A DNA stretch of 64,000 nucleotides, from NCBI GenBank assembly GCA_964106645.2, contig OZ067039.1; one strand, 5' to 3'. This document shows positions 41,105 to 51,513 of this stretch, piece after piece. The stretch is from Podarcis pityusensis. Its lineage: Eukaryota. The translations under genes were made by a program, and so were the position numbers. Every line of letters starts with the position of its first letter. The stretch's first letter is position 1. The notes below the pieces were generated by a model that saw only the letters and a list, made by a program, of their open reading frames with translations, was not told the origin of the DNA and searched no databases.

Positions 41105-42960
41105 AAATAGTCAAGCTAAAGACACAAGCTTAAAGAATCTCACAGACTATGACACTGTCCTACTGCTGTCCCAGAGCATAGGGCTATTAGAAAGGAATAC
41201 CCTCAGGACATTTTCTCCAGTGTCTAGCCTACCTATTATTTTTATTACTAAATTTACTAACTTTATTCATAGATCTCAGGGAGGTTCACAACATAAAATT
41301 ACAACATAAAATATACAATAAAATTAAGAACAAAAACAAGCCAATAATCCCCCCTCCCATAACACATTTAAAAGGGCATCAGATGTCCATAAGCCAAAGG
41401 CCTGGTGGAAGCAGAGTGTTTTCACCTGGCACCTACCTCATGGATGGAGGCCACAGCAAGCTACAGGATTTCTCAGATGGGGAAAACTTCCACTGAAAAA
41501 AGCAAACACAAAAAGGCAGCTTCAAGGATTGTTAAGTTCCCAGCACATTTTGAGTATGGCTTCATCAAAGGAAAATTATCATTTTTGCTCCTTCATAAAA
41601 AAAACTGCTCCATAAAAGCTACATGCTACCACTGCTTTAAGAAGGCTGATTAAGGAACAAATATGAGCATTTTACCCCCGATAAAAGACATACTCAAAAT
41701 GCATTGAGAATTCAGCAAACTTTCAGCTGTCCTTTTATATTTCCTTTTTTCCCCTGTGGATTTTAAAAGCCACTTTCAATAACCCTTCTTCTTGTTAAGA
41801 CCTTAACCACCTGAAAATGGTATCTAAATACAAAGTATAAGAGACAGAAAAAAAGGAACAGAAAAGTGTGTTTTGGGGACCCAAGTCCAAGAAAGGTTTT
41901 AAAAACATAACCACTTAAGAAATATTTTGTTTAAAAGAAATAAAATACAACGTCAAACAATTCTATGACAAGGGCCCCGGACCTTCAGTGCAAACTATTT
42001 TGTTCATAGGAGTGCATGAACAGTGAGCAACTTTAGTTACCAGCGTAATCTCTCTGAGATCAGTTACTTAACTTTCCCTGCCCACAACATCTGCAACATC
42101 AGGCACTCAACCTAAGCCATTCATCTTTAAAATATGTTTTGAATTGCAGTAACAGACTGTTGCTACCTAGTTCCCTTGAATAGAATTTGATTTACTACAA
42201 AGATGCCATGCTGGGGGTGGGCTGGGCTCTTTTGGAGTCATTAAGAGAAAATACTATAAAAGGAATCCCCTAGAGAAACTGTTTCTAGGGTCAGGAAATG
42301 TGAAAAAAATAAAAGTGGTTAAGTGGTGGTCTACTTTAAGAAGTGATTATTCACAGTGCACCTGTAGGAAAAGAAGAAACTCTCTACTGATTCTTCTTAA
42401 GAAGGAGAGACAGACAGAGAGAGGGAGAGAATTCAAAAGTTTGATTACTATAAAGGAAAAAGAAATATTTGGCCTACGTGTTATTTAAATATTAATGTCC
42501 TCTGCCTAAGCAAAAAGTAATATCTAATACGCACTGAATACTTTCCAAACAGCCTTCACAGGTTTATGGCTAAAATCCACAAATCCATTTACTTTAGAAT
42601 AATCTTACTAAAGTCAACAGGACTTCTCGGGAGCAAGAGTGTTCCAAATATGGTTTGTGTGTATTTCTTGAAAAGGAAACAATTATTTTATTTTTTTAAT
42701 GACTGGGATGCATTTCAATCAAAGCACATGCAAAACTAATTTGTAAAGGAAACAACTTTTGTTTCAGCTTTAAAAAAATGAGAGCAGGAGGTGTAGAGCA
42801 GGCAGTGAAGCAACTTTGAAAAAACAACAAAGCGTGTTCTCCCTAGCAGAGAGCACGTGTTGCGGTTGGGAACAGGCCACCCTCCAGTGACTAGGCAAAT
42901 TTAGTTGAATCCCGACCATTTAAATGGTTAAACTGGGTTGCTGGGGTGTTTTGATTGTTG

Positions 42961-42993
42961 CCAATTCGGAGGAGGGGTCAGAGTCTATATATA
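42961..42993 (+). promoter_or_regulatory. Candidate internal promoter of the YR element (CCAAT + TATATATA)
   Basis: CCAAT 42961-42965 and TATATATA 42986-42993, ~130 bp inside the 5' end; motif match only. Confidence 0.35.
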
Positions 42994-43494
42994 CAGGGGC
43001 CAGACGTTGGCACGGCCTCTTGGCCGTTTTGCATCGGATCACATGGAGCACTTGGACAATCTTCTCATTGTCTGGTTACATTTCTTTATTTCTTTATTTT
43101 CCCCTTCTTTTTAATCCTCTCTAGTCCCTTAAATAATTTAATTCCCCCCTTTTCCTGTTCAATTTCCCACCCCACCCCTTACCCTACCCCGTAGGAAGAT
43201 TCTCCCTGTATCTGTGGCTTGCCTTTCCCAATAGGGAGAGAGCCCCCGTTAGGGGCTTTCTTTCGCAAAAAGGTTTCCCCCATTTCTCTTGTTGAAATTG
43301 TGGGGCTAGTCAGGGCTGTTCCCAGCTTAGCTGGTATCACTTTCGTTTATAGTATCCCCGAAGGTTGGCTTTATGGCTCCCTGTGCCTCCAAGGACTATG
43401 AGCACTCTGTATATGCTCTTGAACTATGCTGTTTCTGAACAAGTTTATTTTCTTTAAGTTTGTTTTGCCCTGATAGTGGCGACTGCCATTTTAG

Positions 43495-43575
43495 AGATGA
43501 GCCATTGTGGCTTAGTGGCTAAAGTGTAGGACTAGGACCTGGGAGACAGGGTTCATATACCCCTCTTAGCCATTG
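43495..43575 (+). mobile_element. tRNA-derived SINE head nested in the YR element
   Basis: gtggcttagtggctaaagtg..ggactaggacctgggagacagggttca, similar to the head of the 26053 SINE. Confidence 0.55.
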
Positions 43576-44059
43576 TTATAACAAAACAAAACAAACTGCT
43601 CCTTTTGGGCTATTCTGTTGCTGGGTAGTTCGGCCCATTTGTGATAAAAGAACTTTGGGTTTCTTGAAGGGGTGCTTCCCTCTAAAAGGGCAAGCAGGGG
43701 TACCTGGACAAGCTGTGGGCTACCTCAACTCTGCTATTTCACTGGAAACATTTATGCCTGGCCTAGCAGGTGACCATAGGGCTTTGCCCTAGAATTCGAT
43801 GGCCTGGAAGCGTTTCCGGCCTCAATAGTGTCCCCATGTGGTCCATGAAGCATTGGTTTCACTGGGTCAGCGGATAGTGCCGGTAATGCCTAGGTTGCAG
43901 GATTGGTCCCTGTATGGGACAGCTGCATGCTCCCCCATTGCTCTACCTGGACACTTAAGTCCTTTTGGTGGTTACCTCACTGCGAGGGATGTAACGGGCG
44001 CCATGTTTGCAATATGCAACTGGGAGAAAGCACCTTTGCGTGCGTTGCAGAGCACGGCG

Positions 44060-44650
44060 CTGCACGGGCTGCAATTGCATTGCATTGCTAGGAGATTTGC
44101 AGTTGCATTGCACGGAGTGTGTAGTTGCATTGCACGGAGGGTGTAGTTGCATTGCACGGAGTTTGTTGTCTCATTGAACAGAGGGTGTGCAGTGCACGGA
44201 GTGTGTAGTTGCATTGCATGGAGTGTAGTTGCATTGCATGAAGGGTGTGTGCATTGCAGGGAGTGTGTAGCTGCATTGCATGGAGGGTGTAGTTGTATTG
44301 CACAGAGTGTGTTGTTTTGTTTTGTTTTTGCATTGCACGGAGTGTGTGTGCATTGCACAGAATATGTAGTTGCATTGAACAGAGGGTGTGCAGTGCACGG
44401 AGTGTGTAGTTGCATTGCATGGAGTGTAGTTGCATTGCACGAAGGGTGTGTGCATTGCAGGGAGTGTGTTTTGCATTGCACGGGGTGTGTAGTTGCATTG
44501 CACGGAGGGTTTGTGTGTGCATTGCACGGAGTGTGTAGTTGCATTGCACAGAGCGTGCTTTTTTGCATTGCACGGAGTGTGTAGTTGCATTGCATGGAGA
44601 GTGTGTGCACTGCACGGAGTGTGTTTTTTGCATTGCACAGAGTGTGTGTC
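44060..44650. repeat. Minisatellite, ~20-22 bp unit GTGTGTAGTTGCATTGCACGGA
   Basis: Roughly 25-30 degenerate units; higher-order ~95-bp block duplicated at 44172 and 44373. Confidence 0.92.
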
Positions 44651-44898
44651 TGAAAAGGAAGCTGGCTTGGCGGCAGCTTGGTTGGGACTTCTTTAGGGGT
44701 TCTGGCCAGCATCGGCCCTGTAAATTTACATATGATGGCAGCACAAGATGCCCCCTGCCCAAGCGGGGGCTGGAAGCTGGCAAGCAATAGCTCAATACCT
44801 TTTGCCCATATTCCCATTTTTAGGGATCCAGTTGGATATCGTTGCTAAAACATACCACTTGGCTATGGAGAAGCTGTCTGCCTTGAAGGAAGTTAATT

Positions 44899-45403
44899 TG
44901 TAATACTTCCTCTGTAGCAAGTGATGCTTCACCAGATCCGATCTTGCTGGGTCACTTAACTAATCTTCCCACTAGGCCAGGCTGCCTAGATTTCACCCCT
45001 CCCATATCCAAGAATCTCCTGAGGAGTCTGCTGATTCTCCAGAGAGGAGGAGGCGTGTTCTGGTCTCTACTTATTCTGCTCCAGCACCAAGTCAGTCACT
45101 CAGTCAGTGTCGGAGAGGGAGAGAGACTGAGTGTTAGAGATCATGTGTAGAGATAAGGTTGCTGCTAAGGGCAGCTGCAGACACTCAGTGCAGTGCAGCA
45201 TTTATTTATACTTAGACCTATTAAGCTCTGTATATAGTTTGTATAGTTGTAGATAGAATAAAGAAGATATTCTACAGAGCTGCTCTCCGAGTTGTTTATA
45301 TACTCTGCTAGACTCTGCTGTACTCTGCTGTGCGACGACTGTCCTTTTGTTGGAGTGAATCCGGTGCTCACAACTCTAAGCTGTGAGTCCACAGTACTTT
45401 GAC
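44899..45403 (+). mobile_element. LTR-like insertion interrupting the RT-RNase H region
   Basis: Interrupts the pol-like sequence between ...EKLSALKE and downstream pol remnants; starts TGTAATAC, AATAAA at ~45257; no clear TSD, boundaries approximate. Confidence 0.4.
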
Positions 45404-45539
45404 CTGTTCCTGTGCAGAAGGTGGTCTCTGGAAGTGCTACCCAGCTCGCCTAGCCCAGTTGGGGCTGAAGTGGATGAGTCCAGTTGGTGGCACTGGCTCA
45501 AGGGCGATGCTGACAGAGGTCCCCTTACCTTTGTGTATG

Positions 45540-46030
45540 CCTACCAAGTGTGGTGAAGGCAGATATCAGGCGATGGTAGCAATTCCTGAATGTATGCAAT
45601 AGTAGTTCGCCATGGCAGGATACCTTGAACCCGCTCAGGGATTTTCAGGTTCATGCTGGTGCTGCTGGATCTTTGCCCTTTGGTTTTATTTCAAGGGCTG
45701 CTGGTGTGCAAAGCTATGGCCTCAAGCCTGGTGTGGTGAGGCAATCATGTGACATAACTTTTCTTGAGTTTTCCCCATTGTAGTAGCAGTTCACGTGGCC
45801 CGAGGAGTTCAGTGACCATCGGATCTGCTTTTGGTCTGATAACCAGGTAGTGGTGAGCGTCTTGGCAAAACAGTCCTCATGCTGTAGCACAGTCTCTGCC
45901 CCTCCGCTCATGCTTTCGAGCTGCGCCACTTAAGGTTTAATATTGTGCTTTCTACTCTCCAAATTACGCTGACACTATTCGATTTTCAGATGAAGCGCTT
46001 CAGATCCTGGGCTCCAGACTCAGCTATTGC
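45540..46030 (+). pseudogene. RNase H domain remnant of the YR retroelement
   Basis: Frameshifted KADIRRW*QFLN, DFQVHAGAAGS..FGxYFKGCWCAKLWPQAW, DITFLEFxPIVVAVH.WPEEFSDHRICFWSDNQVVVSVLAKQSS, FQMKRFRSWAPD: the DIRS/Ngaro RNase H signature. Confidence 0.85.
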
Positions 46031-46039
46031 CAGACTTTT

Positions 46040-46945
46040 CCAGACCTGTGGCATTTTGACAACAATTAGTAATTTCAGAGAGCGGCAGCTTCCATTTCCC
46101 CTTCTGCTTTTACCTCTTATGGGAAGGCCTGGATGGATTTCTTAGCCTTAAGCTGGCAGTTCTCGGCCATTCAGAAGAATTGGCCCCCATCCTCTGAGCA
46201 GATCCTGCAGTATTTGGTCCACCTGCTGCAGATTGGGCATGCGGTTATAACTATCCGAATTCAGTCCGCTGCAATGTCTGTTACATTGAAGCTTTATTTT
46301 TCAGAGACCCTTGTATAAAGTTTGCAGTGCGCAGGGCCTTGGAAGGTTGGAATAGGCTCCAACCTCATAGGACAGTGGGCAGGAAGTCGGTCAATTTTTA
46401 CCTATGCAGTATCTGCAACAAGTTAAAACTTGTCTGCGGGTTAAAGATCAAGGTGAGACTACTTTCAGGAGTCCATTGCATTTTCGCACTGAGGGTTGGG
46501 GAAATGGTTGTTGGAGCCAGCACGGGGCTGAAAGTCTGGAGGCTTATTGCTTCAGGACTTTTCCTTATCCTTTGGAGCTTGTCATTAGAGTTGGTAACTC
46601 TAAAACAGACTTAGTGGGCAGGAGTGCCACAATCAGGCTTCCCGCCACAGGTGAGGAGGGCCCTTGCCCGGTTATGGATAACAGAATATTTGGCTTTTTA
46701 TTCCCTGGGGGCTGGCCCGCTCCAGTGCATGAAAATGGGTTCCTGTTAGCCCGGCATCAATGTGCTTACGTCGTGCACCAGTTATTACAGCCTGCGGCTT
46801 GCTTACCGCTGTACACTCCTCATTCCTTACGATTAGGTGCTGCTGCAAAGGCTGCACACTGGGGGCCTGTCAGTAGACAGGATTGTGAATACGGGTCATT
46901 GGAAGTCTGACGCTGACAAGGGTTATATCAGGAAGTGTCACAATG
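46040..46945 (+). pseudogene. Tyrosine recombinase (YR) remnant
   Basis: FALRVGEMV (box I Arg), SKTDLVGR, PCPV, HSLRLGAA (HxxR), GHWKS...GYIR (Trp/Tyr); several frameshifts. Start approximate. Confidence 0.9.
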
Positions 46946-46987
46946 ATGTCTGTGCTGATGCTTGTCTGTTATTTCCTTTTTTCATAG

Positions 46988-47298
46988 GAGCAGCTGTGCA
47001 CATTTGAGCCACAGCATTGTACACTAGGCTGGCAAGCATGTTGACGAGTTTGGACTGGGGCGCCATCTCAGTCTTCCTGCCCATGTGAACATATACTGGA
47101 TGTCCAGATGGGGAATGCTTTGGGAGGAGATCCTTCCTTTGGTGCGGTCGAGTGTGACCTGTGCAGGTCCTCCCGCAGTGCTGGTGGTACAGCTGGGCGA
47201 GAATGTTTGCTGTCTTCCTCCAGCATAAGTTTGCATTCCTGCATGCAAGAGGGCTTGGATTGAGTTGATGGCAGCTCTCCCTGGACTCAAAATAATTT
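46988..47298 (+). pseudogene. SGNH/GDSL hydrolase copy 1, N-terminal half, disrupted
   Basis: VHIx(G)HSIVH*AG...LGRHLSLPAHVNIYWMSRWGMLWEEILP...GPPAVLVVQLGEN...LPGLKII; clear paralog of 48071-48645. Confidence 0.85.
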
Positions 47299-47299
47299 A

Positions 47300-47581
47300 A
47301 GGCATTGGTTCAAGGTGGTCTGGAGGGGGGGTTGGAGCACCTGTCCCCTCCAATGCGCAAAGATGTTCCATTAAGGGAATCCAAGGATTCGCCATGCTTT
47401 TGTCGATCCCTTTTGAGGGGTAAGGCCATGCAAGAGTCCCTGGGAGCATTTGGGGTGAGCTTGAGTCTGATCCTGGTTCATTGCTCCCCCATGCTGTTTA
47501 CTGGAACTGACGATATGGTGGGGCCCAGTCGTCAGTGCTGCCCTGCTGAGGTCAGGTGCAGCTAGTCGGGAACCAATGCCT
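47300..47581 (+). ncRNA. Candidate structured cis-RNA element, diverged copy A
   Basis: aggcattggtt/aaccaatgcct closing stem; tggagggg/cccctcca; ttcc-attaag-ggaa; ggattc/gagtcc; ggggtgagc/gctccccc; actgacga/tcgtcagt; gctgc-cctg/cagg-t-gcagc, then tagtc. Same order as copy C. Confidence 0.55.
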
Positions 47582-47971
47582 AGACAAACTACCACCGAGC
47601 AGGCCTGAAAGCATGTTAATAAGGCGGTGGATAATAGAATAAAATAAATAAAGTAAATAAAATAACAAATAAAATAAAATAGGTCTTTGCTTTAGGTGGT
47701 TCTGTAATATTGCACCCTCCTAATTTTCTTCAAGGCTATTGCCCTCTTTAGGGCAGATGGGGTGCATCTTTCCCCTATGGGGAACGACACCTGGCGGGAT
47801 GCGATTGCCTTGGGATTCATTGCTCCCCCACAATGTTTGCTGGTACTGACGATATGGTGGGGCCCAGTCGTCAGTGCTGCCCTGCTGAGGTCAGGTGCAG
47901 CTAGTCGGGAACCAATGCCTAGACAAACGTACCACCAAGAAGGCCGGAAAGCATGTTAATAAGGCAGTGGA
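47477..47971 (+). repeat. ~155-bp direct repeat pair (47477-47631 and 47816-47971)
   Basis: Both read ttcattgctccccc...actgacgatatggtggggcccagtcgtcagtgctgccctgctgaggtcaggtgcagctagtcgggaaccaatgcctagacaaac...gaaagcatgttaataaggc.gtgga, with a long identical core. Confidence 0.93.
47681..47815 (+). pseudogene. SGNH hydrolase copy 1, displaced C-terminal fragment
   Basis: VFALGGSVILHP..ALFRADGVHLSPMGNDTW, containing the DxxH block V. Confidence 0.8.
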
Positions 47972-47997
47972 AATAAAATACAGGTCGTTGAAATCGA

Positions 47998-48645
47998 ATG
48001 CATTCAAAGATTATGTTCGTTAACATTATTGGTGTCTTACAATTTTTGCTTGTTTTATCTTATTTATCAGGTTTAGCGGTGACCCGTGTTTGGATTGTGG
48101 GGCACAGTATCGTCCATTGGGCTGGCGTCGCAGCACGGCAATCTGGATTGGGTCCAGATTTTGGCTTTCCTCCACATATTCGCTTGTCTTGGCTGTCCAG
48201 ACGTGGGATGCGCTGGTCGGAGTTCCTGCCAAGTATCCGGAGGCAGTTGCTCTTGGAGGGGCCGCCACCTGCTATTGTGGTGCAGCTTGGTGAGAACGAC
48301 CTGGTGCCCATGGACTGTTTGTCACTACGTGCTGCAATTTTGGGTGACCTGGAGACGCTGCGTGCAATGGTGCCGACAGCGAAAATTTTTTGGTCAAAGC
48401 TTTTGCAACGCTGCGTTTGGAAGGGCAGTCGTTGCCCGGCTGCCACTGAAAGGGCCAGAAAACGCATCAATTCTGCTGTGGTCAAAAAAGTTTTGGAGCT
48501 GGGTGGCGATGCAATTTCCCACCCCGAGATTCTTTTTGAGAGGCCATCCTTTTTCCGAGCTGATGGCATGCACCTTTCCGCTTCAGGGAATGAGGCTTGG
48601 ATTGGTGCGGTGGTGACCAAGCTGAGGTCTTGGTTGGGGCTGTGA
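47998..48645 (+). CDS. Intact SGNH/GDSL-family hydrolase (esterase) ORF, copy 2; domain-coding part starts after the acceptor-like site at 48071
   Basis: 215-aa open frame; block I VWIVGHS (Ser), block II RRGMRW (Gly), block III QLGENDL (Asn), block V ADGMHLS (Asp/His) all intact. Confidence 0.85.
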   Translation: MHSKIMFVNIIGVLQFLLVLSYLSGLAVTRVWIVGHSIVHWAGVAARQSGLGPDFGFPPHIRLSWLSRRGMRWSEFLPSIRRQLLLEGPPPAIVVQLGENDLVPMDCLSLRAAILGDLETLRAMVPTAKIFWSKLLQRCVWKGSRCPAATERARKRINSAVVKKVLELGGDAISHPEILFERPSFFRADGMHLSASGNEAWIGAVVTKLRSWLGL

Positions 48646-48982
48646 GTGGTTTGGCGGTGAGCTGAGGGCTCCATGGCGGTTAGGCATTGGTTTAATTGGT
48701 GCTTGGAGGGGTAAGTGCCTACCCCTCCAAATGATGCGAATGGGAATTCCGTTAAAGGAAATCCAGGGGCTTGCCATTCTTTCGTCCTTGTCCCCGGAGT
48801 CGGACTTGGGCCGTGCAAGCCCCACAGGAACATGAGGGTGAGAAGTAATGGTCTGGTGCCCAGCTTTATTTCTCACCCAATACTTGTTTCCCACGCTGGC
48901 TTCCGCTGGTGTCCGGAAGGCCAGCTCTGTCCCTGAGGGCAAGGACAGATAGTCATAACCAATGCCTAAGCAACCACTCACA
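48641..48982 (+). ncRNA. Candidate structured cis-RNA element (multi-hairpin, closed by long-range stems), copy C
   Basis: Stems 48641-51/48972-82 (11 bp), 48680-92/48957-69 (13 bp), 48703-13/48720-30, 48766-74/48815-23, 48836-48/48866-78, 48895-905/48914-25, 48926-32/48943-49. Confidence 0.6.
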
Positions 48983-51513
48983 TTTTTGTATTTGAATAAA
49001 GTTGTGGCCAAAATTATGCCAAAAACCTTAAACAAAAATTGATGTGTGAAGTGTGAATTATTGGGGGGCTACTGTGACTCAACACGCAACAGGCCAACAC
49101 ATGAGGGGGGAAGCATATTGCAGTTTAAAAATTGATTAATGAGGTGCTGACAAACTCATATAAACATGGGGACAGGCAGGCCTGCCAAATCTCAAACCTA
49201 TCCAAATGTTGTGAAGAAAATGCAGTTTTTAATTTGGGACAGGCAAACATAGAGGGGAGGAAAATCAGCTTTAGCATCAAATCTTCATAGATTGTTAGTT
49301 TTCAAATGTATGTGCAGCACTGGAGGTTAGCAGACTGCTAATAAAAATATCAGATGGGGGGGTGTTGGTTAAATTTGTGTATCCTAAATTTACTGTTATT
49401 TGCATTCCTCTGTGTACATCCTTCTTTTGCATTATTAAATAGCTCAATGGCAAATGTTCTGGAAGCTAACAAATCTTCTGGAAATGAAAACTAGAGGTTA
49501 AGAAATCAATCTGTTTATCTGAGTTGGTTAACAGAGCCTATTTATTTGTTAGGGTGCACCACCCAATATTTCAAGATTAGGAATCACATTACTCCTCATT
49601 TTTAACCACAGCCCATTAGGTTTCGCTAGCCAATTAGTTTATGACACATTCCTGGTATTTTCAGTAATCTCCATTTTCACTGGAAGCAAATTTCTACTTT
49701 TGTTTACACTTCTAAACACTGTGTGGAAGAGGCTGGAATGACTTATGGGCAGACTACTCCTCGCAGTACACATCTATTATTATTTTGACTCAAGTCCCAG
49801 CTTTAGCAGGATATTAAAGGCCCAGCCTAAATTTAGGTAGATGCTTTGAGGCCACTAACATGCAGTCTCCTCTTGCTGTTCTTTAAAATTAGATATATAA
49901 AAAGCCATTTGTGTATCTTGTAAAGCAGTGAAACAGCAACAAACGCTACTCAAATCAGAGGAATAGCACTATCTGAGGCTCTCTCTGGGTTTGGATGTAC
50001 CATCCAGGAAAATCCACCTTTTGTTTCTCAGAACTAAGATACAGGCACAAGCTTGTGGGGGAAGGAGGCAGATTTGCAATGGAACAGCAGAAGCTGGCTG
50101 TGCACAGTGCTGACTGGCTGGTGCCCGTGCAGTAATGAACCCCCCCCCCAACTTTGAAACTCTATCAAAATTGGCCATTGTTTTTAAAAAGAGTCTTCAG
50201 GCGTTTTTAGAGGATGTTCAGAAAAATGAGCTCATTCTGAACCAGCCCATTAGTACTTTTAATTACACACTTCAGCATACTCTTACAAATTCATAGAAAA
50301 CACAGGTGCCTGTTTTCCAGCAATATCATTCCTGTATTGTCAGTTGTCTGCCTGACTGATAGGCAAAATTCTAACCATACATTTGCCAGTAATAAATTGT
50401 AGCAAACCCAGGGAAGGAGCAAACCAATAATCTTTTCAGTTGTCGTTTTGTGATGATGCAACAGGTATTTTCCCCCAGTAACGACATAATTCACCCAGTA
50501 ATTTATTCCTGAGAATCCAAGGTGTTGTTTTAAAATTACTCATTTTTAGCACGATATCACCAACAGTAGTGCAGTTATTTCCCGTGTGAACAGACACAGT
50601 GCTATGGTCTCACCTCCATTGGATGGAGTGGTTTTTGATAGGGTTGATGACCCCAGCTGCCTCCGTTACCTGGCTAGCAACACTATGCAACCCCACCTTT
50701 CTTCATTATCTCTCCAAAGTTATATTGGTCCCTAATTAACAACTTAAGATGGCTACATACAAGCCTCCCGGTTTGTTCGTTTCTTACTCTCTCTTTAAAA
50801 ATAAAAATGAATGAATATACACACTGCTTTCCCCCCCTAGCACTGGTGAGGTATACTATTCATGAGGGGCTGGTCACGACTCGTTTCCTGGAAAAGCAGC
50901 AGCAATAACACTTGCAAATTTTGCAGGGAAAGTAATGAGTGCAAGTTTCCCCAGCAGCTGCCAGTGAAAGGACAGGTGGAAGATTTTGCAGGGGAAAGTT
51001 TCTCCAGCACCCAAAACCTGGCAGGAGCTCTAGTTAAAAGGCAAAGGCTTTTTCTTGAAATATATATGTTCTCAAAATATATATTGCAAATTTCAATGCT
51101 GGTGTGCACACTTGTAGCCTTTTTTTATTATTTTGGAGGGGGGAGTGCCTCCCTTTCCCCAGGGTAGCAGCAATGACCGCAGCAACTTTTTACAGGGAAA
51201 GGGGTGGACAGGTGATGTCCCGTCAGTAGGAGGAGGAAGCACAGGAGGCTATCCTTACATCGGGGATTAATCAGCTCTTAATAGGGATAATACTAATAGA
51301 ATGTTAGCATAAATAAACAAGCAAACCTTTTTGTTGGTGCCTCGAAGGACCTTGGAAGACCATGGATTAATTTAATTGTGGTACCACGTCTTACAAAATA
51401 TCACAGGGCAGTGACCCATATCCATCAACTGCTTCTGACATACCTTCTTGCCCCGGCTTTCCATGACCTATAAGACTGGATCTGATCTTACCTGTTTTCC
51501 TGTTTTCATAATA

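What the first reader, a model, noticed from the sequence alone, without database searches (positions are those of the whole stretch)
42858..49091. Tyrosine-recombinase retroelement carrying a tandem array of SGNH-hydrolase cassettes
Seen: RNase H and YR remnants followed by two diverged hydrolase paralogs (46988-47815 broken, 48071-48645 intact), each with the same flanking architecture. Established: some vertebrate Ngaro-type YR retrotransposons encode one extra SGNH hydrolase of unknown role. Inference: a multi-cassette accessory module with its own processing signals looks like an under-described system, for example esterases acting on membranes or particles, or countering host defence.
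Basis: partly seen in the sequence, partly recalled or inferred. Interest (0 to 1): 0.8.

Follow-up and report, generated by a model that had tools for sequence, protein, structure and literature searches.

The report
Chimeric helper-dependent Ngaro retrotransposon copy
This lizard DNA is one copy of a defective, helper-dependent Ngaro-type jumping gene built from stacked tail ends of related elements, so it carries dead esterase fragments plus one intact esterase gene; it is not a purpose-built array of esterase cassettes.

Summary
On the + strand, 42828-49089 is a tyrosine-recombinase (Ngaro-type, DIRS order) retroelement in a lacertid lizard. It has RNase H and recombinase remnants, broken SGNH-hydrolase sequence, and an intact 215-aa SGNH ORF (47998-48645).

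The "multi-cassette module" reading does not hold.
- Three intact-looking relatives in Podarcis muralis (L001, L003, L004) have four ORFs and a single hydrolase.
- The "broken hydrolase" is two fragments: an N-terminal half (46988-47297) and a C-terminal quarter (~47720-47815). A copy of the element's non-coding terminal repeat B lies between them.
- The "same flanking architecture" is that B repeat plus a family-wide 3' splice acceptor.
- The dead core and the intact hydrolase with its ends come from different Ngaro lineages.

It is not a one-off nest either. The same mosaic, with the same junctions and shared disruptions, sits at an unrelated P. muralis locus (L002) with near-identical split direct repeats. 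In the best DNA run, contigs matching the window stand at about 35-50 times the flank depth.

Best reading: a multi-copy, non-autonomous chimeric Ngaro family moved in trans. The scan had already noted canonical and reduced Ngaro elements elsewhere in this genome. Interest is moderate to low: a new variant of a known kind.

The parts
42828..43035 (+). A1, the 5' split direct repeat ('X' lineage)
   Evidence: 85.5% identical to A1 and A2 of canonical L001 and 81% to L002 A1/A2. The 5' terminus AAAGCGTGTTCTC is shared by all copies.
43036..44050 (+). 5' non-coding region of the composite
   Evidence: Matches L002 100160-101170 at 94-97% after 43427. No match in canonical L001.
44051..44650 (+). 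Tandem array of about 22-nt units
   Evidence: the repeat finder families D1/D2, 19-25 copies. Present in L002 with a different unit number.
44651..44986 (+). Remnant of the RT C-terminal (thumb) region; the RT palm and gag are missing
   Evidence: By eye, FLGIQLDIVAKTYHLAMEKL resembles L001 ORF2 YLGILLDTVAQTSSLPGDKL. tblastn finds no gag and no RT residues 1-389.
44987..45508 (+). Nested insertion of an unrelated very high-copy repeat, specific to this copy
   Evidence: Absent from L002 (521-bp gap). Depth is 15,000-40,000 in X1, with loose ends at 44988, 45022 and 45516.
45517..46044 (+). RNase H remnant ('Y' lineage), dead
   Evidence: tblastn to ORF2 residues 390-553 (L001) and 428-591 (L003): 38-40% identity, E about 1e-22, at least 6 stops, frameshift.
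45974..46932 (+). Tyrosine-recombinase remnant ('Y' lineage), dead
   Evidence: tblastn to the L001/L003 recombinase ORF: 31-46% identity across three frames, at least 5 stops. The same frameshifted ORF (MQYLQQVKTCL...) occurs in L002.
46988..47297 (+). Hydrolase fragment H1N (N-terminal half, blocks I-III), preceded by a polypyrimidine tract plus AG
   Evidence: 43-54% aa identity to family members over residues about 32-129. The stop after QLGENVCCLPPA is shared with L002. Acceptor context.
47298..47689 (+). B-type terminal-repeat unit of the 'Y' lineage, followed by an A-rich stretch
   Evidence: Colinear with B at 48662-49089 and with B1 of L001/L003 (alignment A1). Homology is demonstrable only to about 47641; beyond that it is not significant.
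47720..47815 (+). Hydrolase fragment HC (C-terminal quarter, block V DGVH)
   Evidence: IFFKAIALFRADGVHLSPMGNDTWRDAI is 50-72% identical to family C-termini.
47816..47980 (+). Second copy of the 3' half of the B-type unit
   Evidence: 93-96% identical to 47477-47641. Aligns to the 3' half of B. Both copies are also in L002.
47981..48070 (+). 'X'-lineage recombinase tail (last codons ...KSNAFKDYVR, stop at 48021-48023) and polypyrimidine tract plus AG acceptor
   Evidence: DNA homology to L001 resumes at 47990, equal to L001 13846. Frame read. The acceptor is conserved in L001, L002 and L003.
47998..48645 (+). H2, an intact 215-aa SGNH-hydrolase ORF; its ATG region overlaps the recombinase stop, and the hydrolase domain starts at 48071
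   Evidence: ORF list. 87% identical to P0001 and 70-81% to other Podarcis proteins. GHS, G, GxND and DGxH are invariant. AF2 pLDDT 90.7 with SGNH-fold matches.
48662..49089 (+). B, the 3' split direct repeat ('X' lineage); the element ends ...ACTCAACACGCAA. This copy has no A2-B2
   Evidence: 89-91% identical to B1/B2 of L001, L002 and L003. Terminus.

Best explanation
window:42828-49089 (+) is one copy of a non-autonomous, chimeric Ngaro-type (DIRS order) tyrosine-recombinase retrotransposon family of lacertid lizards. It consists of:
- a dead core from one Ngaro lineage ('Y'): no gag, no RT palm, broken RNase H and recombinase, a hydrolase in two fragments, and B-type repeat pieces;
- termini from another lineage ('X'): A1 at the 5' end, and at the 3' end an approximately 1.1-kb module made of the last recombinase codons, the intact hydrolase ORF H2 and repeat B.

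The apparent tandem array of hydrolase cassettes is therefore a stack of 3'-end fragments of related elements. Each hydrolase piece is followed by B because that is the normal order in every Ngaro element: recombinase, hydrolase, B1, A2, B2.

Inferred: the mosaic arose once, by template switching or recombination. Because it keeps the A and B ends that the machinery recognises, it has been copied as a unit by autonomous four-ORF Ngaro elements of the same genomes. H2 is a passenger of the 3' module. It looks intact because that module is younger than the core, has been exchanged with functional lineages, or both.
For: Shown.
1. Canonical relatives have one hydrolase. L001 has A1, ORF1 (515 aa), ORF2 with RVT_1 (583 aa), the recombinase ORF (267 aa), the SGNH ORF (205 aa), then B1, A2, B2. 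L003 and L004 have the same order.
2. Two lineages. The window matches L001 at DNA level only in A (85%) and over 47990-49089 (84%). Its RNase H, recombinase and H1N are only 31-49% aa identical to L001, whereas H2 is 78%.
3. CpG observed/expected is 0.67 in H2, like canonical ORFs (0.67-0.79), against 0.25-0.40 in the dead parts.
4. The same mosaic is at an unrelated locus. L002 99949-106672 is colinear with the window through every junction, at 92-98% identity. It has both B-half copies, the same hydrolase stop and the same recombinase frameshift, and unrelated flanks.
5. L002 is a young, complete insertion: A1 = A2 at 100% over 207 bp, and B1 = B2 at 99.5% over 428 bp.
6. Copy number. In run X1, contigs with 0-1 differences from the window have depth 687-1030, against 20.4 for the flank contig. 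One of them (47899-48126, depth 760) spans the junction into the X module. Twenty runs under seven species labels hold part of the stretch; 14 of them hold half or more of its words.
7. It cannot be autonomous: no gag, no RT palm, and multiple stops and frameshifts.
8. Ngaro elements with a fourth SGNH ORF and A1...B1-A2-B2 repeats are described in the literature (PMC9210276, PMC7192593).
Against: - The window copy has only A1 and a single B, so its own mode of insertion cannot be dated or proven.
- Copy number rests on per-contig k-mer depths from one run of unknown library type. The tool warns that summed depths are not copy numbers.
- Only two full copies were read.
- Divergence between those two copies is uneven: core 2-3%, H2 and B 7-10%, A 19%. 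Simple copy-and-decay does not predict this, and it needs an extra assumption (exchange of ends with other elements).
- H2 shows dN/dS of 0.32-0.35 (p = 0.001), so 'mere passenger' may be too weak a description.
- No helper element with a near-identical hydrolase or near-identical ends was found.
Confidence: 0.78

Rival explanations
1. The hydrolase is retained on purpose. The non-autonomous family must supply its own SGNH esterase in cis (or the host uses it), so H2 is kept by selection while everything else decays.
For: H2 is the only intact ORF in both copies read. dN/dS between them is 0.32-0.35, p = 0.001, against 0.61 (not significant) in the dead parts. All catalytic motifs are invariant. 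CpG content is like that of active elements. The nearest solved relative by sequence is the esterase of a LINE ORF1 protein (4c1b).
Against: H2's synonymous divergence (0.144) is 3.6 times that of the dead core (0.040). This suggests the H2 regions have a deeper, separate history, in which the constraint may have acted inside autonomous elements. Copies in run X1 are nearly identical, so intactness there needs no selection. RNA reads of two runs left 47500-48499 essentially uncovered, and no spliced read (joint) was seen anywhere on the stretch. The composite lacks the gag exon and splice donor that canonical elements appear to use to express the hydrolase.
Confidence: 0.2
2. One reading: a functional tandem array of SGNH cassettes, each with its own processing signals, serves as an accessory module of the element.
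For: There are two or three stretches of hydrolase sequence. Both 46988 and 48071 follow a splice-acceptor-like site, and each piece is followed by a homologous non-coding unit.
Against: Only one ORF is intact. The other sequence lacks its middle and carries stops that are shared between copies. Canonical intact elements have one hydrolase. The repeated unit is the ordinary B terminal repeat.
Confidence: 0.03
3. A private accident of this locus: two unrelated elements nested or adjacent here, never propagated as a unit.
For: The core and the ends belong to different lineages.
Against: The identical mosaic, with identical junctions and complete, near-identical split direct repeats, lies at an unrelated locus in P. 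muralis. The junction-spanning contig has a depth about 37 times that of the flank.
Confidence: 0.02
4. The mosaic spreads by segmental duplication or gene conversion of genomic DNA, not by retrotransposition in trans.
For: No transcript of the composite was seen in the RNA runs. Uneven divergence along the element hints at DNA-level exchange.
Against: Homology between the window and L002 stops exactly at the canonical termini (AAAGCGTGTT... and ...ACACGCAA) and the flanks are unrelated. L002 has regenerated A1 = A2 and B1 = B2, as fresh retro-copies do. There are tens of near-identical copies.
Confidence: 0.07

Closest known systems
Ngaro-like retrotransposons with a fourth SGNH-hydrolase ORF (e.g. 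DIRS-53_XT / DIRS-54_XT of Xenopus; Goodwin & Poulter 2004, as cited in PMC9210276)
   Same: Split direct repeats A1...B1-A2-B2. ORF order gag-like, RT/RNase H, tyrosine recombinase, SGNH hydrolase. No methyltransferase. Hydrolase function unknown. The canonical lizard relatives L001 and L003 fit this exactly.
   Different: The window element lacks gag and the RT palm, has a dead RNase H and recombinase, is a mosaic of two lineages, carries extra hydrolase and B fragments, and in this copy has only A1 and one B.
SIRE, the truncated non-autonomous derivative of the tyrosine-recombinase retrotransposon VIPER in trypanosomes (PMC6681497)
   Same: A multi-copy derivative that keeps the ends of an autonomous tyrosine-recombinase retroelement and depends on it for movement.
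   Different: SIRE is about 0.4 kb and non-coding. This family is about 5.7-6.7 kb, chimeric, and keeps one intact accessory ORF.
Esterase domain of the ORF1 protein of CR1/L2-type LINEs (zebrafish ZfL2-1, PDB 4c1b)
   Same: An SGNH esterase encoded by a vertebrate retrotransposon. It is the best PDB match by sequence profile (E = 0.001) and is also found by fold.
   Different: A different class of retroelement. There the esterase is a domain of ORF1p; here it is a separate last ORF. Identity is only about 22%.
Bacterial GDSL/SGNH esterases such as TesA and the Bacteroides acylhydrolases (4jgg, 4iyj, 4hf7)
   Same: Same fold (TM 0.70-0.76, probability 1.0) and the same four catalytic blocks.
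   Different: 12-20% identity. Block I reads GHS rather than GDS. Pfam GDSL models score below their gathering cut-offs.

Membership tests
Ngaro-type (DIRS order) tyrosine-recombinase retrotransposon | Split direct repeats A1 ... B1-A2-B2 | tested here: met
   The sister copy L002 has A1 = A2 at 100% (207 bp) and B1 = B2 at 99.5% (428 bp), and canonical L001 and L003 are the same. The window copy itself has A1 and one B only.
Ngaro-type (DIRS order) tyrosine-recombinase retrotransposon | Encodes a tyrosine recombinase instead of a DDE integrase | tested here: met
   The remnant at 45974-46932 is homologous to the L001/L003 recombinase ORF (E 1e-25 to 1e-34). That ORF gives a weak Pfam Phage_integrase hit (E 0.0034, below cut-off). 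It is broken in the window.
Ngaro-type (DIRS order) tyrosine-recombinase retrotransposon | Own RT/RNase H | tested here: not met
   Only the RNase H end of ORF2 (residues about 390-553) is detectable, and it carries stops. No RT palm and no gag. The element is therefore a derivative, not an autonomous member.
Ngaro-type (DIRS order) tyrosine-recombinase retrotransposon | No methyltransferase domain (separates Ngaro from DIRS1/PAT); an SGNH ORF after the recombinase in vertebrate members | tested here: met
   L001 ORF2 hits only RVT_1. The last ORF hits GDSL models weakly. Order confirmed.
SGNH/GDSL hydrolase superfamily (H2) | Flavodoxin-like SGNH fold | tested here: met
   AF2 mean pLDDT 90.7, pTM 0.88. 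Foldseek found 164 PDB matches at E <= 0.001; the top ones are GDSL esterases and TesA at TM 0.70-0.76.
SGNH/GDSL hydrolase superfamily (H2) | Catalytic Ser (block I), Gly (II), Asn (III), Asp-x-x-His (V) | tested here: met
   G15-H16-S17, G50, G78-E79-N80-D81 and D169-G170-x-H172 are invariant across 16 family members, including H2 (alignment A2). This is by sequence position only.
SGNH/GDSL hydrolase superfamily (H2) | Pfam Lipase_GDSL_2 above the gathering score | tested here: not met
   19.5 bits against a cut-off of 32.9 (E 0.0015). L001 and L002 homologues score 22-24 bits. Membership is at superfamily/fold level only.
SGNH/GDSL hydrolase superfamily (H2) | Esterase activity | not testable with these tools
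   Needs expression and an enzyme assay.
   One intact ORF. The other hydrolase sequence is an N-half plus a C-quarter with shared stops. Canonical elements have one hydrolase.
Non-autonomous, trans-mobilised derivative family | Several copies at unrelated loci that share inactivating lesions and keep canonical termini | tested here: met
   The window and L002 share junctions, a stop and a frameshift, with unrelated flanks and exact termini. Contig depth is about 35-50 times the flank. Actual mobilisation in trans is inferred, not shown.

The most novel reading that the evidence does not exclude
The SGNH esterase is the one protein an Ngaro RNA has to bring along itself. A helper-dependent family that has lost gag, RT, RNase H and recombinase has kept, or repeatedly re-acquired, an intact and constrained hydrolase ORF (dN/dS about 0.3) at its 3' end. 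Canonical elements, meanwhile, make the enzyme from a spliced message that fuses the first ~178 gag codons to it. That would point to a cis-acting role for the esterase in tyrosine-recombinase retrotransposition, for instance in membranes or particles.
Probability: 0.15. Interest if true: 0.6.

Novelty: new variant of a known kind. Interest (0 to 1): 0.35.

Why it matters
Ngaro elements with an SGNH ORF are known, but the enzyme's role is not, and helper-dependent derivatives of vertebrate tyrosine-recombinase retroelements are hardly described. This family gives a natural contrast: everything is dispensable and decayed except the terminal repeats and the hydrolase ORF. It could therefore be used to ask whether the esterase acts in cis. 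It also shows that the termini of such parasites do not share the history of their core, which bears on how split-direct-repeat elements regenerate their ends. For genome annotation, the practical point is that 'multi-hydrolase' Ngaro loci and some predicted lizard genes (P0001, P0009) are mosaics or splice artefacts of these elements.

Tried and rejected
1. I first read 47477-47641 and 47816-47980 as the missing middle of the hydrolase. This rested on a gappy tblastn alignment (33% identity, 36% gaps) and a 62% DNA match. I rejected it: there is no significant DNA similarity to the H2 middle, but the stretch is clearly colinear with repeat B.
2. I looked for a third, older 'middle plus C-terminus' in 47298-47476. 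That stretch is the 5' part of B instead.
3. I tested whether 47642-47815 is an A2 repeat. It has no similarity to A1.
4. I tested whether the B-type unit runs to its true 3' terminus at about 47722. The alignment is not significant, so the question stays open.
5. A word search with the recombinase remnant, aimed at a canonical 'Y' element, returned only one Logan fragment of the same composite (P0028). No intact 'Y' relative was found. This blank is weak evidence, because the word-based search needs shared 5-mers.
6. The B-like piece downstream in L004 has no hydrolase or recombinase next to it.
7. Rfam found nothing in 42700-49300.
8. RNA reads from two runs (organism G) left 47500-48499 essentially uncovered and showed no spliced reads anywhere on the stretch. 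This is no evidence of silence, because the species, tissue and subfamily may all differ.
9. Pfam on the window's short ORF pieces other than H2 found nothing meaningful.


Full report
**What is in the window**

On the + strand a G+C-richer block (about 0.5 against 0.36-0.39 in the flanks) runs from 42828 to 49089. A six-frame reading and tblastn with the ORFs of intact relatives show the following:
- an RNase H remnant at 45517-46044, with at least 6 stops;
- a tyrosine-recombinase remnant at 45974-46932, spread over three frames with at least 5 stops;
- hydrolase-like sequence at 47004-47297 and 47723-47806;
- one intact ORF of 215 aa at 47998-48645.

No gag and no RT palm domain are detectable. 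A 600-bp array of roughly 22-nt units lies at 44051-44650.

**The intact ORF is an SGNH hydrolase**

- Pfam gives only a sub-threshold GDSL hit (19.5 bits against a cut-off of 32.9).
- In an alignment of 16 family members the motifs GHS, G, GxND and DGxH are invariant (A2).
- An AlphaFold model has mean pLDDT 90.7.
- Foldseek returns GDSL esterases, TesA and similar enzymes at TM 0.70-0.76.
- The best PDB match by sequence profile is the esterase domain of the zebrafish ZfL2-1 LINE ORF1 protein, 4c1b (E = 0.001).

**Who the relatives are**

The ORF finds 27 proteins. All named hits are from lizards, mostly lacertids: Podarcis muralis, P. lilfordi, P. raffonei and Zootoca vivipara, plus the agamid Phrynocephalus more distantly.

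The locus of P0005 (L001, P. muralis) is an intact-looking four-ORF element:
- A1;
- a gag-like ORF1 (515 aa);
- ORF2 with RVT_1 (583 aa);
- a recombinase ORF (267 aa);
- an SGNH ORF (205 aa) whose ATG overlaps the recombinase stop;
- then B1, A2 and B2, with A1 = A2 and B1 = B2 at 100%.

L003 and L004 have the same order. This is the published Ngaro-like architecture with an SGNH fourth ORF of unknown function (PMC9210276, PMC7192593, PMC6681497). These canonical elements have one hydrolase.

**The 'array' resolved**

- The segment 47298 to about 47641 is colinear with the non-coding terminal repeat B at 48662-49089 and with B1 of L001 and L003 (alignment A1). The local score is 47, against 17.9 +/- 2.5 for shuffles.
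- Its 3' 165 bp recur at 47816-47980.
- The order after the recombinase is therefore: hydrolase N-half (46988-47297); a B-type unit with an A-rich end (47298-47689); hydrolase C-quarter (about 47720-47815); a B-type 3' half (47816-47980); the last recombinase codons of another lineage (...KSNAFKDYVR, stop at 48021-48023); H2; B.
- About 36 codons from the middle of the first hydrolase are absent.
- I cannot tell whether the two dead fragments are one gene interrupted by a B-type unit or the remains of two stacked 3' ends.
- The 'same flanking architecture' is real and has a plain explanation. B follows the hydrolase in every Ngaro element. A polypyrimidine tract plus AG precedes the hydrolase in every copy examined: the window at 46987/46988 and 48070/48071, and L001, L002 and L003.

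**Two lineages in one element**

- At DNA level the window matches L001 only in A (85%) and from 47990 to 49089 (84%).
- Its RNase H, recombinase and hydrolase N-half are 31-49% identical in protein to L001, while H2 is 78% identical.
- CpG observed/expected is 0.67 in H2, as in canonical ORFs (0.67-0.79), but 0.25-0.40 in the dead parts.
- So a decayed core ('Y') is framed by younger ends ('X').

**Not a private accident**

- L002, the P. muralis locus of P0001, is colinear with the window through all junctions, at 92-98% identity. It has both B-half copies, the same stop after QLGENVCCLPPA, the same frameshifted recombinase ORF, an intact H2 (216 aa) and unrelated flanks.
- Its A1 = A2 (100%, 207 bp) and B1 = B2 (99.5%, 428 bp) mark a recent, complete insertion.
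- Homology stops at the canonical termini AAAGCGTGTT... and ...ACACGCAA.
- In the best DNA holder (run X1), contigs with 0-1 differences from the window have depths of 687-1030 against 20.4 for the 3' flank contig. One of them, 47899-48126, spans the junction into the X module. That is roughly 35-50 near-identical copies. The caveats are that one run's k-mer depths are a rough measure and that the flank may be hemizygous.
- Twenty runs under seven species labels hold part of the stretch; 14 hold half or more of its words.
- Because the shared lesions predate the copies, the family cannot move by itself. Mobilisation in trans by autonomous Ngaro elements is the inference.

**Uneven history along the element**

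Between the window and L002:
- the dead coding remnants differ by pS 0.040 and pN 0.024;
- H2 differs by pS 0.144 and pN 0.050 (dN/dS 0.32-0.35, binomial p = 0.001);
- B is 90% identical and A is 81% identical.

The A and B of the two composite copies are no closer to each other than to those of canonical L001.

My reading is that the ends have been exchanged with other family members. Template switching onto a helper RNA while the split repeats are regenerated is one possible route. The constraint seen in H2 may therefore have acted inside autonomous elements. Rate heterogeneity from CpG explains only part of the pattern: non-CpG divergence is still 6.7% in H2 against 2.2-3.4% in the core. 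This step is inference.

**Expression**

Raw RNA reads of two runs (organism G, at 90% likeness or more) left 47500-48499 essentially uncovered, and no spliced read (joint) was found anywhere on the stretch. That does not show silence.

Canonical elements carry a GT-AG intron (L001 10536-13911) that joins the first ~178 codons of ORF1 in frame to the hydrolase. The donor G|GTACGT is conserved in L003. Annotated proteins with this join exist in four species: P0005, P0013, P0015, P0017, P0002 and P0021. The composite lacks that donor exon.

**Method notes**

- In one search a local script tried donor and acceptor pairs in L001 and compared the translation with the database protein P0005, to locate the junction. 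The joined sequence was not stored, printed or sent to any search.
- Broken genes were compared only as they stand (tblastn shows stops as *).

**Verdict**

The locus is a copy of a multi-copy, chimeric, helper-dependent Ngaro family that retains one intact SGNH ORF. It is a new variant of a known kind, of moderate to low interest. One open and testable question remains: is the hydrolase kept for a reason?

Noticed in passing
L001:10536-13911 (donor also at L003, about 6670): Canonical lacertid Ngaro elements carry a GT-AG intron (G|GTACGT ... TTTATTTACTTTAG|G) that would fuse the first ~178 codons of the gag-like ORF1 in frame to the SGNH hydrolase. Annotated proteins with this join exist in P. 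muralis, P. raffonei, P. lilfordi and Zootoca. This suggests a spliced subgenomic message for the hydrolase, which I did not find described for Ngaro elements.
   Followed up: partly
L001:14925-14950; L002:105853-105880; window 42828 and 49089: The B1|A2 junction reads ...AACACGCAA|AGCGTGTT..., an inverted repeat (ACACGC / GCGTGT) made from the two element termini. It is a candidate core site for the recombinase. The window copy (A1 ... one B) looks like a circle opened exactly there.
   Followed up: partly
window 44987-45508: A 521-bp insertion absent from the sister copy L002. It belongs to a repeat with depth 15,000-40,000 in run X1 and is the best-covered part in the RNA runs. It contains AATAAAG. 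Its class was not determined.
   Followed up: partly
window 48900-49099: The 3' part of repeat B has a summed depth of about 130,000 in X1, against about 750 for the rest of the element and 20 for the flank. This suggests thousands of B-derived short copies (solo B or a SINE-like family using the Ngaro tail).
   Followed up: no
window 49087-49290: In run X1 the single-copy flank contig (3954 bp, depth 20.4) extends 1474 bp upstream of 49087 without lying on the element. That looks like an empty site: the insertion may be polymorphic or species-specific. The upstream letters could not be inspected.
   Followed up: partly
L002:10001-10084 and 104752-105405: The predicted P. muralis protein P0001 joins a 28-codon exon 95 kb upstream to an AG lying exactly at the junction between the B-type half and the recombinase tail of the composite. 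It is either a host-element chimeric transcript or an annotation artefact. P0009 is likewise a recombinase-hydrolase splice model.
   Followed up: partly
window 44051-44650; L002:101233-101647: The array of roughly 22-nt units (TGCATTGCACGGAGTGTGTAGT-like) in the 5' region differs in unit number between the two copies. It creates long spurious ORFs on both strands (for example 281 aa on the minus strand).
   Followed up: no
L003 and L004 (P. muralis OZ076958.1 at 75.0 Mb and 14.9 Mb): Two canonical four-ORF elements have identical hydrolase genes, matching repeat coordinates and 100% identical split repeats. L004 has an extra B-like fragment downstream that gave no match in L003, so at least that flank differs. 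This points to very recent activity of the autonomous family.
   Followed up: partly
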